Shown: piece by piece, positions 27,602-56,540 of the stretch
Layout: each line of letters opens with the position of its first letter
Numbering within the stretch: the stretch's first letter is position 1
DNA from: Saccostrea cucullata
Taxonomy: Eukaryota
Assembly: GCF_032062105.1 (NCBI RefSeq)
Contig: NW_026930969.1
Location: 1-64,000, forward strand
Reading direction: 5' to 3'
Length of the DNA: 64,000 nt
Made by a program: the position numbers and the translations under genes
The notes under the pieces: model-generated
What the model was told of the DNA's origin: nothing
What the model saw: only the letters and a program-made list of their open reading frames with translations
Database searches by the model: none

Positions 27602-30600
27602 TTACCATTCTTGAGAGCCTGTTCCTGTGATGGGCATCATTTCATCACATTCTAGATCCTTCCTGCGCTTCCTTCGAATCCACAGATAACACCCTACAAC
27701 AACAATCACAAGTCCTACGGCCACCCCTGCTGCTAGTCCGATCAAAAGAGTACGGACGGGCGGATCATCAGAGGCGGATTGTCGTCCGACTACTATTATA
27801 TTAGGAATATCTGTGTCATTTGTCGAAAGTGTTGTAATTACATATACGTCTTCATTTATGGTATTATTATAAAAATCAAAATTTCGTAATGTTGTTTGAT
27901 AGGACTTTGTACTAGGAGCAGAAGGCCGGGCTGTTATTGTGGTTGACGTAGTTTGCAGAGCGGGTTTAGTTGTTTTAAAACGTGTTTTTGTTGTCGCTTT
28001 TCTTGTTGAAGATTCTGTTGTTGGTCTGGTCATTATCATTTGAGTGGTGGTCAGTCTTGTTGATCTAAACGCTGTCGTAGACACTGATTGTTTGGTTGAG
28101 CTGGGTGGAGATGTGGCAGCAGTTGTGGTTGATTTTTTGGTAGACGCTCGTAAAGTTGTCGAAATTTTTGTCGGTTTTGTTGTCGATCTTACCAGTAACG
28201 TGGTGGTTGTTGTTCTTAATTTTTTTGTTGTTTTCGTCTTTTCTGTAGGCTTTGTAGTTGTTCTTGACTGCGATGTTAAGGTGGATGTAGTAGTTAATTG
28301 TTTGGTAGTACGCGGTGTTGTTGTATTTGTTTTTGCTGATTTTGTGGTTGATCTCGATGCTGATGTAACGCTAGTTGTATCTGATTTCAGTGTTGAGATT
28401 TTTGTTGGCTTTTCAGTAAAGGATGCCGATGACGTAGCAGTAGCAGTTGACTTGATTGTACTTGTCCTGGTTTTTGTTGGTTTCTTAGCAGAGCTTAAGG
28501 TTGATGTGGAGACGGTGTTGGTTGTTGGATTTCTTGAGCCGTTGGTAGTTTGTACTTTTGTTTGATATCCTGTAGTGGTAAGAGTGATTTGTTGTGCTTT
28601 TGATTGCTTATCTGCTGGTTTTGTTTTATACTCTGTGGTTACGAATGATTTTGCGGTCGATGTTTCTACATTGGTTATTGGTTTGATACCCGGCTCTGAC
28701 GTCTTCATATTAATAGTTTTAGTTTCTGCTGTGACTGAAATAGATGTCCCATCTTCAGGGATAACTGTTATATCTTTAGTTATGTTTGTTTGATCTGACT
28801 TGATACTCGTATTAATGTCAGGTTCTTTTGTCACACTAGCCACATTAGAAGTCACGTGACTCTTAGTTGTATGACGTATTGTTAACTTCGTTGAAGTCAT
28901 ATCTGTTGTAGTTTCCACTGTATTTGCGTCATGTGTTTTATCTGTTGCTTGTACTGAACTGGTCTCTTGTGTTACGCTTATTGGTTGTTGAGCTTTATTT
29001 GTTGTAACGTTTTGGGATGCTAGAGTCGTATCGATATAAGAAGTTGAAGTTGCAGTTAATTCAGTTGTAGTTGAATCTGGGATATCAAATATAATTAGAG
29101 CAAATTAAAATATATGCTGATAAACTGATTTGAACGTAATAAATAATGTAAATAAACACAGATAATTGCAAACAAAAAACTTTACTTTGAAGTAATAATA
29201 ACCTCTGGCCATATATATATTTTCAGCTTGTAAACAACATTTGCATTCAGTCAAAGCTTAACGAGTTTCTTTGGAACAAAGTACCCTTTTTAATTGCTAC
29301 TAATGACTCTGAACTTGCCCAACATCTCTTGTCAAGAAGTATTTTAATGCTTTTTAATTAAAAAATTAAGTCTGGACAGGACTTTAATGTATTTCTTCAC
29401 AAATCCGAAAAAAATATAAGATATATCCATACATCCGGTATTAGGTAGTGACATTACATAAATATTGCATGTAGTTGAGTGTAACATTAAATGTTTTCAC
29501 TCAAGATAACCACTGTCAACCGTGCGCAGCCGAGGTTGACAATGGTTTTCTTGGGTGAAAACATTTATTATTATACTTTCATGTTAAATACTAAAATCTG
29601 ATTGGTTTAGAAGTTAACAATTTATTATGTTAGCAACACACGTGACAACGGGTAACACAACGGTAATACATGGTATCAGTTGCGCGTTTGAAAGAACCGG
29701 AATTATTATATCCGATAAATACTTGAATTTTGCGAGTGTAGGAAACATGCTTGCGAGCCAGAAATAACGAAGCTTTAAATATGATAAATGACTCTAATTC
29801 GAGTATCAAACAAACAATAAGGAGATTAGTGAACCGGTGAGTGTGAAATCTTCCTAATACATGAACGTAAAGACGATCGACGCTTAATCAATAAGACATT
29901 CAGTATAATAAAATAAATGGTGCCTGTTTTGGAGGGTAACATTTGAAATTGACACCCCTCGGAAAACCATTGTCAACCTCCGCTGACGCGTCGGTTGACA
30001 ATGGTTTTCCTTGGGGTGTCAATTTCAAATGTTACCCTCCAAAACAGGCACCATTTATATAATGTTACACTTAACTACATGGTATTTATTATATTATACT
30101 GAATTTTTTATACAAATACATATTACAGTGAATCTTGCGCGCATAAATTCTGTGCAGTCAACATTTTTTGGAATATCATCCGTCGTCAAGCAATGTTGAC
30201 TGTTGCTATGCTCAAGGGTATGGCTTCATTATTTAGCAGGTAATGGTGTTTTTAAACATATGTTTCTCTACGAATTAGATTCAACTAATTTACTTGAAAG
30301 TATAATACTTTGAAATCTATCCATATATTAGATAGTGACATCAAGGCCACATGCATATGGCACCTTCAGATATCATACAAAAAACCTTTTCGTCAATTAC
30401 GAGGACAAAAAAATTAATTCTTTTCTGTAAATGTACTAGTATTGCCCAAACATAAAATAAGTATTTTGTCTTAAAATGGCATATTACTTGCCGACATAAT
30501 ATTATTTTTATACCTTTAAAAATTTGTTCCTTAACAAATCTATACGAAAAAAGTCGAACATTTGTTTTGCTGAACGGGCATAAAAAAGTCGATGTTGGAC

Positions 30601-54339: not shown

Positions 54340-56540
54340 TATAAATACGAGTAAAATAAAATCGTAGTTTTATAAAATATATAAATATTTATATTTATAT
54401 ATAACTTCCCCTTGAACATGTTGAAGTTTGCTAAAAATATTATCAATTTCCATTAACAAAATTTTGTGAACAACTGATGCCCTGTTGCTATTTTATTGCC
54501 AAGATGTGTCCCTCAAGTGCAAGTAAAACTACAAGATCAAGAGGTCAAATGCCTTAGTAACCATAAAAGATTTGTCACAAGGAATAAAAATGTGAAATGT
54601 AAAAAGTTCTTGCTCCAGACTTCCAAAAAATATGATATGGCCAAGTTTATCGTTTTCAAAAGATGAACTCCAAGGTCAAGACCATGTGATAAAAATATTG
54701 GTTTAGCAAATAAAGGTTTCGTCATAATGAATACACGATAGCCTTAGCACCAACAGTTTATTGGTTATAGTTCAATCTCACATGAAAGCACTAACTCTAA
54801 CCAATCAAAGTTAAGGTTAATGGTTTTGCAGACAACATATACAACAGGCAGACGGACAGACCAAAAAATTGACTAAATGCCTTCGAATCTTTGATTAAAA
54901 GGGCAAAAAACTGCATGGGAAGATAGTTATGAGAATATGACTTAAAATGGTTTCGTGGTGAGTCATCCAGTACCAATTATGATTCGGTGTTATAAATGTA
55001 TTTTTAGCAAATACTACCGCTGTAGTACTAGTATAGAGAACATGCAGTGACGCAAACAACACTGACCTTTACTATACTCTATAAAGCACAGATTTTTTTG
55101 TTTTCCAAAAAGGATACCACATGTATTATTTTGATATAGTTAAAGAAGAAATTCTGATATTTTCCTTTTTTACAGGGTGTGTCAATGCGAATTATGAAAA
55201 AAAAAAACGAATGTTGCAGACATTTAACACAAAAAATAAAATACCAGAAAAAATCTGTTTCGGTTACTAGATAAGTTATACTCCCCAAGTAATCAAGTTG
55301 CAGTCAAGTGCAGTACTAGTATAAACTATCGTCATAAGATGACGATAATGTAAGTACTGCATGTACTCTTAAATTGATAATTTCTGATCATCAGTTCTCC
55401 GACTTGTCTGTGTATGTATTAAATGCTTTTTATCTGAAGAAGTTGAATTATATGACGACTCCTTGGCCTGTTCGTGGTATCGATGTTAATTCTAATGATT
55501 TGTCATCCAAAACAATAACATTTACATTAATGTTTATTTCATTTTCTGAACATTAAACTTCAAATTTAGTGATATGCATTTAAAAACATTAATAAACCAT
55601 GACTTCAATTAGCCACTTTAAATTATTAACACCGTATATCTTTATTAGAATGACCGTTAAGCTGTTGAATTTTGTGCTTGTTTAGAAGTGGAATCAAATT
55701 ATATTTTACAACATCCTTCAATAAAAAAAGTCATCATTACTGACCGCCTGGAGGCAATTCTCTGTGAAAATTAAGTAGGGGTATAATGCAGTTCGATGGA
55801 TCAGTATTTTTGCAAATAGCTCCAAGGCCATCTTCGCATGCCAAGGGTTTTCGATCACTGTGCTTTATTTTAGCAAAAATTTGGGAAAAAGATGAAAGTT
55901 GTGTTTGTTTTTTTAAAAAATGACTTCACTATATTTTTACAACCGTCTAAAAATTCTTTCAAAGGAATCAATGTTATTTTGTAATATGGTTACTTTCCGT
56001 CATGTTCCTTGTGCGTTTTTTTTTTTTCCAAAAACAATTCATACATTGTACTTTACTGTCAGTTTTCAAACATTTCAAAATTATGTATGAAACCAGCCTT
56101 AACTAACTTAACATGGTTTCTGAATGTATCTAAAGTATATTTCATAGTATATTATACTTCATCAAGGTCATAGTACACTTACCCACACACCTTGGTGGGG
56201 GTCTGCTCCAGAAACCGTTCCTACAGGTGTCGTAAGATTCCCCGTACAGAACAAATCCATCATTACAAGTAAACGATATTGCTCGCCCTTTCATTCGGAA
56301 ACTGGATCTTCCATTCGGAATTTCAATCAAATTACAATCTCCTGGATAGAAATTTACATACACATTTATATGCAAATTGGGTTAAACAGTTCCATGTATT
56401 GGACCGATTAAAGAAAGAAATGAAAGCGAAATAAAGTTTTGGAGAGTGTTTGTATTTTACAAGTCTCTATACTCACCAAGCACTAATAATGGACTAATTC
56501 CTGTAAAAATAATAATTGTAACAATAAATCGCATGTACAT
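48787..56540 (-). CDS. Paralogue B: signal peptide-2xCCP-MAM-Ser/Thr mucin stalk-TM protein, class C scavenger receptor-like (~557 aa)
   Basis: Exons 56477-56540, 56183-56341, 51317-51481, 51054-51215, 50661-50801, 50426-50568, 50200-50290, 48787-49535; 1674 nt, in phase. Same intron phases as paralogue A, with exons 1, 5 and 6 of identical length (64, 141, 143). MAM motifs [47 protein letters not shown]. Confidence 0.9.
49830..49920 (+). mobile_element. Short interspersed non-LTR 3'-end fragment (second copy ~3090-3175)
   Basis: ggggatgctcactcctccaaggcacctgatcccacctct matches ggggaatacttactcctccaatgcacctgatcccatctct at ~3107. Confidence 0.5.
51572..54136 (-). mobile_element. HINE carrying ~13-14 copies of the ~166-bp Cg170-type satellite (intron 2 of paralogue B)
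   Basis: Same termini as 4846-5966 in reverse orientation; period 166-167; units at ~53030-53310 and ~53820-54060 carry scattered deletions. Confidence 0.88.
54256..54334. repeat. (AT)n microsatellite
   Basis: Run of about 35 AT units. Confidence 0.95.
54455..54910 (-). mobile_element. Degenerate CvA/pearl-like HINE
   Basis: gtgaacaactgatgcccc end, aaggtcaag repeats and a cagacggacaga microsatellite remnant. Confidence 0.45.

What the first reader, a model, noticed from the sequence alone, without database searches (positions are those of the whole stretch)
27602..56540. Tandem pair of class C scavenger receptor-like genes (2xCCP-MAM-mucin-TM) in a bivalve
Seen: two complete 8-exon genes with identical intron phases and three identical exon lengths, but very divergent protein sequence and stalk length (last exon 1475 vs 749 nt). 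Established: CCP-CCP-MAM-(somatomedin B)-Thr-rich-TM is the layout of Drosophila SR-CI and of arthropod class C scavenger receptors used in phagocytosis and dsRNA uptake; I know this class mainly from arthropods. Neither gene here has a somatomedin B exon. Inference: an old duplicated molluscan SR-C-like family. A gamete-adhesion role (MAM plus mucin, as in zonadhesin) is an alternative.
Basis: partly seen in the sequence, partly recalled or inferred. Interest (0 to 1): 0.75.

Follow-up and report, generated by a model that had tools for sequence, protein, structure and literature searches.

The report
Two oyster scavenger-receptor-C-like genes
Two neighbouring oyster genes encode cell-surface proteins that are built like, and related in sequence to, the class C scavenger receptors insects and shrimps use to take up microbes; both are real genes already in public annotation under uninformative names.

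Summary
Two intact 8-exon genes lie on the minus strand: gene A (27602-41307, 804 aa) and gene B (48787-56540, 557 aa). Each encodes a signal peptide, two CCP/Sushi domains, one MAM domain split over four exons, a Ser/Thr-rich stalk, one membrane span and a short tail. Intron phases are identical, all 14 introns are GT-AG, and three exon lengths match (64, 141, 143 nt).

The two N runs lie about 1 kb upstream of gene A's start codon, outside every coding exon.

RNA reads confirm five gene B junctions exactly, including MAM-to-stalk.

The organism is Saccostrea cucullata. Both genes are already RefSeq models, named "mucin-5AC-like" and "MALRD2-like".

The SR-C reading holds. The whole CCP-CCP-MAM head aligns collinearly with arthropod Sushi+MAM+somatomedin-B proteins. 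One of these scores 301 bits against the crystallised Spodoptera SR-C MAM domain. The CCP pair alone scores 62-81 bits against insect SR-C, versus 27 bits against any solved CCP protein. MAM-only trees are only moderately supportive.

There is no somatomedin B exon, as in shrimp MjSRC. Both subtypes also occur in Pinctada, so the duplication is old. Function is inferred, not shown.

This is a new member of a known kind, of moderate interest.

The parts
41244..41307 (-). Gene A exon 1: start codon at 41307 and signal peptide (MKIPYIGIILTFYLVTEISEG), 64 nt, donor GTAAGT, phase 1
   Evidence: The same N-terminus occurs in the S. echinata (P0002) and Crassostrea-type (P0004-P0006) orthologues.
40658..40825 (-). 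Gene A exon 2: CCP/Sushi 1, strongly cationic (14 K/R against 3 D/E over 50 residues)
   Evidence: Pfam Sushi E 3.5e-6; net charge; boundaries.
40398..40568 (-). Gene A exon 3: CCP/Sushi 2
   Evidence: Pfam Sushi E 1.3e-6.
39916..40086 (-). Gene A exon 4: MAM part 1 (profile positions 1-39)
   Evidence: Pfam MAM E 2.9e-7.
37801..37941 (-). Gene A exon 5: MAM part 2 (profile 44-86), 141 nt as in gene B
   Evidence: Pfam MAM E 3.9e-7.
37400..37542 (-). Gene A exon 6: MAM part 3 (profile 87-130), 143 nt as in gene B, ends in phase 0
   Evidence: Pfam MAM E 2.2e-4.
37210..37291 (-). Gene A exon 7: MAM part 4 (profile 131-157), 82 nt
   Evidence: Pfam MAM E 3.3e-3. Exons 4-7 sum to 537 nt, a frame-preserving phase 1-1 cassette.
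27602..29076 (-). Gene A exon 8: 437-aa Ser/Thr-rich stalk (43% S+T, no Cys), membrane span, 29-aa tail ending ...ECDEMMPITGTGSQEW, stop at 27602-27604
   Evidence: It is 100% identical to the C-terminus of RefSeq 'mucin-5AC-like isoform X2' P0001.
47708..47723 (-). Alternative first coding exon (MKTHL plus 1 nt, donor GTAGGA) used by public isoform X2 of gene A. It has no signal peptide, so this form is doubtful as a receptor. It may instead belong to a small gene in the spacer.
   Evidence: This is the only match in the window to the back-translated pattern followed by GT; sequence context.
42279..42657 (.). Two N runs (42279-42415 and 42521-42657) with 105 read bases between them. They lie upstream of gene A's ATG, in the spacer between the genes, in no coding exon.
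56477..56540 (-). Gene B exon 1: start codon at 56540 and signal peptide ([22 protein letters not shown]), 64 nt, donor GTGAGT
   Evidence: identical to the N-terminus of P0163.
56183..56341 (-). Gene B exon 2: CCP/Sushi 1
   Evidence: Pfam Sushi E 9.2e-8.
51317..51481 (-). Gene B exon 3: CCP/Sushi 2
   Evidence: Pfam Sushi E 5.7e-7. The joint 51215/51317 was seen in RNA: 6, 8 and 0 reads.
51054..51215 (-). Gene B exon 4: MAM part 1
   Evidence: Pfam MAM E 4.6e-10; RNA joints on both sides.
50661..50801 (-). Gene B exon 5: MAM part 2, 141 nt
   Evidence: Pfam MAM E 6.1e-11; RNA joints.
50426..50568 (-). Gene B exon 6: MAM part 3, 143 nt
   Evidence: Pfam MAM E 1.2e-3; RNA joints.
50200..50290 (-). 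Gene B exon 7: MAM part 4, 91 nt. Exons 4-7 again sum to 537 nt.
   Evidence: No Pfam hit alone, but the whole protein P0163 gives MAM 137-300, E 2.4e-41; RNA joints 50290/50426 and 49535/50200.
48787..49535 (-). Gene B exon 8: 194-aa Ser/Thr-rich stalk (38% S+T), membrane span, and a tail with [14 protein letters not shown] (a YxxPhi-type motif), stop at 48787-48789
   Evidence: It is 100% identical to residues 310-557 of P0163 = XP_062568579.1. The tail is conserved in Pinctada P0166 and in fragments P0164, P0165 and P0168.

Best explanation
Genes A and B of the hooded oyster Saccostrea cucullata encode type I membrane glycoproteins. They belong to the same family as arthropod class C scavenger receptors (SR-C).

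Each protein has a signal peptide and a membrane-distal head. The head consists of a cationic CCP1, then CCP2, then one acidic MAM domain. It sits on a Ser/Thr-rich, probably O-glycosylated stalk of about 440 aa in A and about 190 aa in B. A single membrane span and a short cytoplasmic tail follow.

What is shown: the gene structures, the domain order, gene B's splicing, and the sequence kinship of the whole head with arthropod SR-C.

What is inferred by analogy with fly, shrimp and moth SR-C: the head binds polyanionic or microbial ligands through MAM and CCP, and the tail drives clathrin-type internalisation. Gene B's tail carries a conserved YxxPhi motif (YQEL). Gene A's tail carries a conserved acidic E-x-DEM-x-PI box. 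On this reading the proteins act as endocytic or phagocytic pattern-recognition receptors.

The two genes represent two subtypes that already existed before oysters and pearl oysters split. The somatomedin B domain of insect SR-C is absent, as it is in shrimp MjSRC.
For: Structure: see the observation check.

Identity: gene A is RefSeq 'mucin-5AC-like isoform X2 [Saccostrea cucullata]' (P0001). Gene B is XP_062568579.1 'MALRD2-like', 557 aa, and reads as my exon model.

Kinship with SR-C:
- (Lottia head as query, 43 hits among 1735 candidates) returned 12 arthropod-type proteins. They share 37-40% identity over 64-95% of the head. Ten of the 12 carry Somatomedin_B.
- Pfam on three of them confirms Sushi + MAM + Somatomedin_B.
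- P0151 scores 301 bits against PDB 8yt7, the Spodoptera SR-C-like MAM.
- The CCP pair alone is specifically similar. Gene A scores 64-80 bits against three insect SR-C proteins and 62-82 against other molluscan members. Gene B scores 81 bits against Periplaneta, more than against gene A (63). The best single stretch against any solved CCP protein was 26.8 bits.
- In the careful MAM tree of 72 rows, the smallest side holding all 25 molluscan and arthropod rows has 26 rows, with support 86/80.
- In the 110-row set, the tree with the union held together was 41.7 log-likelihood units better than the free quick tree (p-AU 0.894).

Shared features:
- Ser/Thr-rich stalk, one hydrophobic span and a short tail occur in 11 of the 13 molluscan full-coverage hits (not in P0100 or P0127) and in 11 of the 12 arthropod-type hits (not in P0141).
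- CCP1 is net positive in 23 of 23 rows that have it.
- An acidic-[LMV]-x-x-[ILF] box aligns in tails of both phyla (suggestive only).

Function by analogy:
- MjSRC has 2 CCP + MAM + TM and no somatomedin B. Its MAM binds a WSSV envelope protein, and its tail recruits beta-arrestin2 and clathrin (PMC5222524, passages).
- Sf-SR-C mediates endocytosis of Vip3Aa through its CCP and MAM domains (PMC11203654 passages; PMC6191154 listing only).

Age of the duplication:
- Pinctada imbricata has both B-type P0166 and A-type P0138.
- In the head tree rooted on arthropods, the B-type is sister to all other molluscan members (80/87).
Against: No function, ligand, cell type or localisation was tested. The tissues of the RNA runs are not known to me.

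MAM-only evidence is moderate:
- The quick tree left the two clades apart on an unresolved backbone.
- The union is exactly one clade in only 16% of bootstrap trees, and one crinoid MAM sits with it.
- An AU p above 0.05 does not show a clade.
- Only 110 (then 72) of 702 stored MAM domains were used.
- No vertebrate MDGA, meprin, neuropilin or PTPR MAM was in the trees.
- Among solved structures, human MDGA1's MAM scores higher than the SR-C MAM against gene A (102 vs 88.5 bits).

Other weaknesses:
- Somatomedin B, part of the original fly SR-CI layout, is absent.
- Gene A's tail has no canonical tyrosine or dileucine signal.
- Gene A's splice junctions and gene B's first two were not checked against reads here.
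- The Crassostrea-type orthologues of gene A lack MAM altogether. If MAM is the ligand-binding part, the function cannot be uniform across oysters.
Confidence: 0.7

Rival explanations
1. Convergent domain shuffling. Molluscs assembled a CCP-CCP-MAM-mucin-TM protein independently from common extracellular modules. The likeness to SR-C is then architectural only.
For: CCP and MAM exons are phase 1-1 modules that shuffle easily. This genome itself shows it: P0053 is CCP-MAM-CUB-EGF. S. echinata P0007 has a doubled module: the first has three CCP-like stretches by eye, Pfam shows two MAM. The MAM-only backbone is weakly resolved. MDGA1's MAM is as close as SR-C's among solved structures. There is no somatomedin B.
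Against: The CCP pair alone, with no MAM, scores 62-85 bits between molluscan and insect members in both directions. It scores about 27 bits or less against other CCP proteins. Linker lengths and domain order are collinear across 24 rows. The stalk, TM and short tail are shared. The constrained tree is better than the free tree.
Confidence: 0.1
2. The genes are true SR-C relatives, but they work as adhesion or barrier molecules rather than uptake receptors. Candidate roles are homophilic MAM-mediated cell-cell adhesion, a membrane-tethered mucin of epithelia, or gamete adhesion as in zonadhesin.
For: MAM domains mediate homophilic adhesion and oligomerisation in PTPR and meprin-type proteins (established knowledge; PMC5222524 discussion passage). 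The long mucin stalks resemble tethered mucins. Automatic names of relatives include 'zonadhesin-like' and 'mucin-like'. MDGA1, an adhesion-type protein, is the top solved MAM match.
Against: No VWD, EGF or Ig domains are present. The three arthropod SR-C proteins whose function I read about (MjSRC and Sf-SR-C from passages, fly SRC as cited in PMC5222524) are described as uptake receptors. Gene B's tail keeps a YxxPhi motif in 5 of 5 B-type sequences. The automatic names are not evidence.
Confidence: 0.17
3. One or both genes are decaying duplicates or annotation artefacts without a working product.
For: Public isoform X2 of gene A lacks a signal peptide. Gene B's last MAM exon is divergent, with no Pfam hit alone. 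Assembly gaps sit between the genes.
Against: Both reading frames are intact across 8 exons with canonical splice sites. Gene B is spliced as predicted in 3 RNA runs. The signal-peptide form of gene A matches its orthologues. The B-type is conserved in Pinctada.
Confidence: 0.03

Closest known systems
Shrimp class C scavenger receptor MjSRC (Marsupenaeus japonicus; PMC5222524, passages read)
   Same: Two CCP, one MAM, one membrane span, a cytoplasmic tail, and no somatomedin B domain. It is a type I surface glycoprotein.
   Different: It comes from a different phylum. I held no MjSRC sequence, so identity was not measured. The oyster proteins have long Ser/Thr-rich stalks and different tail motifs. 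Virus binding, trimerisation and beta-arrestin recruitment are shown for MjSRC only.
Insect SR-C (Drosophila SR-CI layout as recalled; Spodoptera Sf-SR-C, PDB 8yt7; relatives P0145, P0150, P0151 held here)
   Same: Collinear signal peptide, CCP, CCP and MAM head at 37-40% identity. CCP1 is cationic. There is a mucin-like region, a single TM and a short tail with an acidic/hydrophobic box.
   Different: The insect proteins have a somatomedin B domain after MAM (Pfam) and a DSDVR[FY]L tail box. The oyster genes have neither. The fly sequences themselves were not available to me.
MALRD1/MALRD2 (the automatic name of gene B and of many hits)
   Same: They contain MAM domains of 38-43% identity.
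   Different: MALRD-type proteins have many MAM repeats alternating with LDL-receptor class A modules and no CCP pair. Genes A and B have one MAM, no LDLa, and a CCP pair, stalk and TM.
Zonadhesin
   Same: MAM plus a mucin-like region plus a membrane anchor.
   Different: Zonadhesin (as recalled) has several MAM and VWD domains. No VWD is found here, and the CCP pair is foreign to zonadhesin.
MDGA1 (PDB 5oj2)
   Same: It is the best-scoring solved MAM domain against gene A (102 bits). It is also second best against the moth SR-C relative (99 bits).
   Different: MDGA1 is an Ig-rich, GPI-anchored vertebrate protein without CCPs or a mucin stalk. The likeness is confined to MAM.

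Membership tests
Class C scavenger receptor (SR-C) | Signal peptide followed by two N-terminal CCP/Sushi domains | tested here: met
   Pfam Sushi on exons 2 and 3 of both genes and on P0001 and P0163. Hydrophobic N-termini are read from the sequence; no signal-peptide predictor was run.
Class C scavenger receptor (SR-C) | One MAM domain directly after CCP2 | tested here: met
   MAM profile 1-157 lies over exons 4-7. 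Whole-protein E values are 1.3e-37 (A) and 2.4e-41 (B). The 9-12 residue linker is collinear with arthropod members.
Class C scavenger receptor (SR-C) | Somatomedin B domain after MAM (insect layout) | tested here: not met
   No Pfam hit. tblastn with 4 arthropod segments gave a best E of 1.3, and no Cys-rich open frame lies in intron 7 of either gene. The feature is not universal: shrimp MjSRC, accepted in print as SRC, lacks it (PMC5222524).
Class C scavenger receptor (SR-C) | Ser/Thr-rich mucin-like stalk, single membrane span, short cytoplasmic tail (type I) | tested here: met
   Stalks of 437 aa (43% S+T) and 194 aa (38% S+T). One Kyte-Doolittle peak of 2.8-2.9 lies near the C-terminus. 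Tails are about 29-30 aa. O-glycosylation itself is not testable here.
Class C scavenger receptor (SR-C) | Sequence kinship of the head with bona fide SR-C, closer than to other CCP or MAM proteins | tested here: met
   Searches are clear for the CCP pair and for whole-head collinearity. MAM-only trees are moderate (86/80 with one extra row; 16% of bootstraps; p-AU 0.894). Drosophila SR-CI itself was not in hand.
Class C scavenger receptor (SR-C) | Binding of polyanionic or microbial ligands and their internalisation | not testable with these tools
   Only indirect evidence: cationic CCP1 (+11 in A, +3 in B) and YQEL in B's tail.
Class C scavenger receptor (SR-C) | Expression in haemocytes or phagocytes | not tested
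   Gene B is transcribed and spliced in three oligo-dT runs, but their tissues are not known to me.
Zonadhesin | Several VWD domains, with multiple MAM | tested here: not met
   No VWD hit and a single MAM. The zonadhesin layout is recalled.
MALRD1/2 | Repeated MAM domains interleaved with LDL-receptor class A modules | tested here: not met
   One MAM and no Ldl_recept_a.

The most novel reading that the evidence does not exclude
SR-C is an ancestral protostome uptake receptor. Molluscs keep two ancient subtypes of it. In oysters these proteins would be the long-sought surface receptors that take up extracellular dsRNA, virus particles and bacteria into haemocytes, and so underlie dsRNA/poly(I:C)-induced antiviral priming (a phenomenon I recall, not checked here). 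The MAM block is a frame-preserving 537-nt cassette. It is absent from the Crassostrea-type orthologues, which would make oysters a natural experiment in removing the ligand-binding domain.
Probability: 0.15. Interest if true: 0.65.

Novelty: new member of a known kind. Interest (0 to 1): 0.4.

Why it matters
In the literature I could search, SR-C is treated as an insect and crustacean receptor class. [quoted passage not shown] A clam genome paper classified scavenger receptors against human and mouse classes only, so class C could not appear (PMC9337622, passages).

Showing that bivalves and gastropods carry collinear relatives of the whole protein moves the family's origin back to at least the common ancestor of molluscs and arthropods. 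It also corrects misleading public names such as 'mucin-5AC-like', 'MALRD2-like' and 'zonadhesin-like'. It gives oyster immunology two concrete candidate phagocytic or endocytic receptors to test, including for dsRNA uptake.

It is not a new kind of system. A July 2026 preprint already lists snail orthologues of Sr-CI from reciprocal BLAST (10.64898/2026.07.10.737666, passages). Its accessions are in supplements I could not open, so I cannot say whether they are this family.

Tried and rejected
- Wide search with gene A's head. It gave 391 hits, of which 120 were listed. The list was swamped by multi-MAM 'MALRD1-like' proteins whose repeats add up, so it could not show SR-C relatives. I replaced it with a shorter Lottia query.
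- ESM Atlas. The top hits were ephrin-receptor clusters at 0.83, below the tool's own trust level, so I rejected them. One 55-member all-mollusc Sushi+MAM cluster was only a lead.
- Literature search was badly designed: min_terms 2 was satisfied by taxon words alone, so it was useless. Searches found no paper describing a bivalve class C scavenger receptor. This holds only for the held library.
- MAM-skipping isoform of gene B (CCP2 joined directly to the stalk, as in the Crassostrea-type orthologues). No such joint reached the listing threshold in 3 runs.
- Hidden somatomedin B exon: none found.
- Recent oyster-lineage duplication (A and B as sisters). It is not the best tree, but it is not rejected either (delta lnL 3.5, p-AU 0.168). 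Whether the duplication predates the bivalve-gastropod split therefore stays open. Its minimum age rests on Pinctada having both types.
- An S. cucullata orthologue of S. echinata P0007 (double module): none found.
- Splicing of the 47708-47723 exon to the Thr-rich/TM exon at about 46566. The phases fit and the join would give a signal-peptide-like N-terminus. No joint was seen and depth there is near zero, so it is left as a note.
- I did not predict structures. They would not have separated the readings.
- I never joined exon translations into a spliced protein for any search. Exons were searched one by one. For whole-protein work I used the public proteins that the tools returned (P0001, P0163).

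Full report
**What is there**

The window is AT-rich eukaryotic DNA. On the minus strand, open frames and splice sites define two 8-exon genes.

- Gene A runs from the ATG at 41307 to the stop at 27602-27604. Its exons are 64, 168, 171, 171, 141, 143, 82 and 1475 nt, giving 804 aa.
- Gene B runs from the ATG at 56540 to the stop at 48787-48789. Its exons are 64, 159, 165, 162, 141, 143, 91 and 749 nt, giving 557 aa.

All 14 introns are GT..AG. The phases after the exons are 1,1,1,1,1,0,1 in both genes. Three exon lengths coincide (64, 141, 143). In both genes the four MAM exons sum to 537 nt, which makes a phase 1-1, frame-preserving cassette.

**Gaps, tested first**

The only N runs are 42279-42415 and 42521-42657, 137 nt each, with 105 read bases between them. 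They lie 972 nt upstream of gene A's start codon, in the 7.5 kb between B's stop and A's start, and in no coding exon. No frame depends on them.

They do sit inside the first intron of public isoform X2 of gene A. That isoform's short first coding exon (MKTHL) maps uniquely to 47708-47723. The claim that A and B are neighbours therefore rests on the scaffold join. Both public proteins are recorded on a contig of 452,946 bases, but that is the same assembly and not independent support.

**Domains, exon by exon**

- Pfam finds Sushi on exons 2 and 3 of both genes (E 9e-8 to 3.5e-6).
- MAM profile positions 1-39, 44-86, 87-130 and 131-157 fall on exons 4-7.
- Gene B's exon 7 gave no hit alone.
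- The last exons encode Cys-free Ser/Thr-rich stalks (437 aa at 43% S+T, and 194 aa at 38% S+T), one strongly hydrophobic span, and tails of about 30 residues.
- A and B share 107 of 275 aligned head residues (39%). Their tails are unrelated at first sight.

**Transcription**

Three oligo-dT RNA runs of raw reads were laid on 45900-51600. They show gene B's five downstream junctions at exactly the predicted bases. This includes MAM-to-stalk (49535/50200; 16, 6 and 10 reads).

No joint skipping the MAM cassette reached the listing threshold. No joint led to the extra Thr-rich exon at 45922-46617.

Most reads are 95-99% identical to the window (929 of 1181 in X21), with many fixed differences. 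The animals sequenced therefore differ from the assembled haplotype.

**Identity in public data**

Gene A's last exon finds 'mucin-5AC-like isoform X2 [Saccostrea cucullata]' at 100% (P0001, 788 aa). It also finds an 857-aa S. echinata orthologue, P0002. P0001 matches my model from exon 2 on. P0002 and three Crassostrea-type proteins carry the signal peptide I placed at 41244-41307.

Gene B's last exon, searched against 1.84 billion representatives, finds six proteins. The best is P0163 (557 aa, 100%), which reads the same as my model at every exon junction. It is XP_062568579.1, 'MAM and LDL-receptor class A domain-containing protein 2-like'.

The gene models are therefore known, but their names are uninformative.

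**Relation to SR-C**

A first search with gene A's head was swamped by multi-MAM proteins. A second search used the shorter Lottia relative's head and returned 43 hits among 1735 candidates.

- 13 full-coverage Sushi+MAM proteins came from molluscs. They are Lottia, Patella, Haliotis (four), Gigantopelta, Dreissena, Ruditapes, Lymnaea, Pomacea and one unnamed. A partial Pinctada protein was also found.
- 11 named arthropod proteins and one unnamed protein of the same type came back (Daphnia, Periplaneta, Diploptera, Schistocerca, Trichogramma, Pectinophora). They share 37-40% identity over 64-95% of the head.
- Ten of those 12 have Somatomedin_B on record. Pfam confirmed Sushi + MAM + Somatomedin_B on three.
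- These arthropod proteins are SR-C: the Pectinophora protein scores 301 bits against PDB 8yt7, 'Scavenger receptor SR-C-like protein' of Spodoptera (PMC11203654, passages).

The CCP pair alone is the sharpest evidence.

- Gene A's pair scores 64-80 bits against three insect SR-Cs, as high as against other molluscan members (62-82).
- Gene B's pair scores 81 against Periplaneta, more than against gene A (63).
- Periplaneta's pair scores 85 against gene B, within the range of its scores against other arthropods.
- The best single stretch against any solved CCP protein was 26.8 bits.

**MAM-only trees are weaker**

I held 702 MAM domains in 158 proteins and used 110 of them (up to three per multi-MAM protein).

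- The quick tree gave a molluscan clade (95) and an arthropod clade (96) on an open backbone, not joined.
- Holding them together gave a tree 41.7 log-likelihood units better than the free search had found (p-AU 0.894).
- For a careful tree I used 72 rows. I dropped long-branch rows, near-identical rows and third domains.
- In that tree, the smallest side of a branch holding all 25 rows has 26 rows. The extra row is one crinoid MAM. Support is 86/80, but the union is exactly one clade in only 16% of bootstrap trees.
- No vertebrate MAM families were in the trees.
- Among solved structures, MDGA1's MAM scores above the SR-C MAM against gene A (102 vs 88.5 bits).

I therefore weigh the head as a whole, not MAM alone.

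**Somatomedin B**

It is absent. There is no Pfam hit. tblastn with four arthropod post-MAM segments gave only noise (best E 1.3). No Cys-rich open frame lies in either intron 7.

Shrimp MjSRC, published as a class C receptor, also lacks this domain (PMC5222524, passages). The feature does not define the class as the class is used in print.

**Two subtypes and their age**

The A-type tail (W-x-RR-x-RRK ... E-x-DEM-x-PI ... GSQEW) recurs in the Crassostrea-type proteins and in Pinctada P0138. A related E-[DE]-E-[LM]-x-P-I box occurs in Lottia, Patella, Dreissena and Ruditapes.

The B-type tail (KYQE[LM]K[LH]FVETHYR, with Y-x-x-hydrophobic) recurs in Pinctada imbricata P0166, a full CCP-CCP-MAM-stalk-TM protein. 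It also recurs in three fragments.

Pinctada has both types, so the duplication predates the split of the oyster and pearl-oyster lineages.

I built a head tree of 24 rows rooted on arthropods. I left out P0128, P0138, P0053, P0007, P0142, P0144 and P0152. In that tree the B-type is sister to all other molluscan members (80/87). A tree with A and B as sisters is not rejected (p-AU 0.168). An origin before the bivalve-gastropod split is therefore possible but not shown.

**Likely mechanism (inferred)**

CCP1 is net positive in 23 of 23 family rows that have it (+11 in A, +3 in B). MAM is net negative in all 24 rows.

Fly, shrimp and moth SR-Cs are uptake receptors. MjSRC's MAM binds a viral envelope protein, and its tail recruits beta-arrestin2 and clathrin. 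Sf-SR-C's CCP and MAM bind Vip3Aa and mediate its endocytosis.

The most economical reading is a stalk-mounted ligand-binding head with tail-driven endocytosis. Nothing here tests that.

**Wider family**

- The Crassostrea-type orthologues of gene A (P0004, P0005, P0006) join CCP2 directly to the stalk. They have no MAM.
- This genome also holds a gene-A-like paralogue on contig C11148. Its exons are 56-92% identical in protein (74-92% for CCP1 through MAM4). It is 72-86% identical in DNA, introns included, and its last exon lies beyond the contig end.
- It also holds a chimeric CCP-MAM-CUB-EGF gene on C5283 whose head is 62% identical to gene A's.

**Literature**

Searches for a molluscan or oyster class C scavenger receptor found no description. 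One 2026 preprint lists snail orthologues of Sr-CI from reciprocal BLAST, without detail in the text.

The original fly SR-CI layout, the roles of SR-CI in bacterial phagocytosis and dsRNA uptake, and oyster poly(I:C) priming are recalled, not read here.

**Verdict**

This is a new, misnamed molluscan branch of a known receptor class. It is of moderate interest, and its function is untested.

Noticed in passing
window 45922-46617 (-), with 47708-47723 (-): A terminal coding exon encodes Thr-rich repeats (61 T in 232 aa), a membrane span and a short tail. It lies between genes B and A on the same strand. The acceptor CAG|CA near 46566 is in phase 1. It would join the 'MKTHL' exon at 47708-47723 to give a signal-peptide-like start (MKTHL-A-LLTAGFGLGLISSVV...). 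That would be a small tethered-mucin gene, perhaps a family relic that kept only the first and last exon types. RNA depth is near zero and no joint was seen.
   Followed up: partly
window 43170-44279 (-): A 370-aa open frame rich in E, K, S and D, ending in a stop, with no Pfam family. It lies between the Thr-rich exon and the N runs. It is probably an exon of another gene.
   Followed up: no
window 49720-49910, 48574-48764, 51439-51600: Short intronic or flanking stretches show very high RNA depth (up to about 78 per strand and run, against 5-10 on gene B's exons), with hundreds of loose ends. Letters inserted at one joint resemble a tRNA-like end. They are probably SINE-type repeats transcribed elsewhere in the genome.
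   Followed up: no
G000:C11148:900-23200 (-) (loci L001-L004): A gene-A-like paralogue has signal-peptide, CCP1, CCP2 and four MAM exons 56-92% identical to gene A in protein (74-92% for CCP1 through MAM4). It is 72-86% identical in DNA across exons and introns. The contig ends before the stalk exon. It is too divergent for an allele.
   Followed up: partly
G000:C5283:69098-86321 (+): This is the locus of P0053 (LOC134263294). Its signal peptide, one CCP and a MAM are 62% identical to gene A's head. They are fused to CUB and several EGF modules, with no stalk or TM. It is an exon-shuffled offshoot of the gene A lineage.
   Followed up: partly
G000:C13605:204000-214300 (+): A single 3434-aa open frame holds about twenty consecutive MAM repeats without introns. 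Many further MAM exons lie up to 70 kb upstream. It appears to be a giant multi-MAM gene or gene cluster.
   Followed up: no
proteins P0004, P0005, P0006 (Crassostrea/Magallana-type orthologues of gene A): These have the same signal peptide, two CCPs, stalk, TM and tail as gene A, but no MAM. CCP2 runs straight into the stalk at the phase-1 junction. The pattern appears in one RefSeq model and two unnamed transcript-like clusters (4 and 34 members). It reflects either loss or constant skipping of the 537-nt cassette.
   Followed up: partly
window 48800-51500, RNA runs X21-X23: Dozens of positions in gene B's exons differ from the assembly in all or nearly all reads. The sequenced animals carry a clearly different haplotype or lineage under the same species label.
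   Followed up: no
protein P0134 (Ruditapes philippinarum): Its cytoplasmic tail holds six tandem copies of the conserved box (SR[HL]EDELKPKT[ND]SASLQSLNNT). This is an unusual amplification of the putative sorting motif.
   Followed up: no
window 42279-42657: The two N runs have exactly the same length (137), with 105 read bases between them.
   Followed up: no
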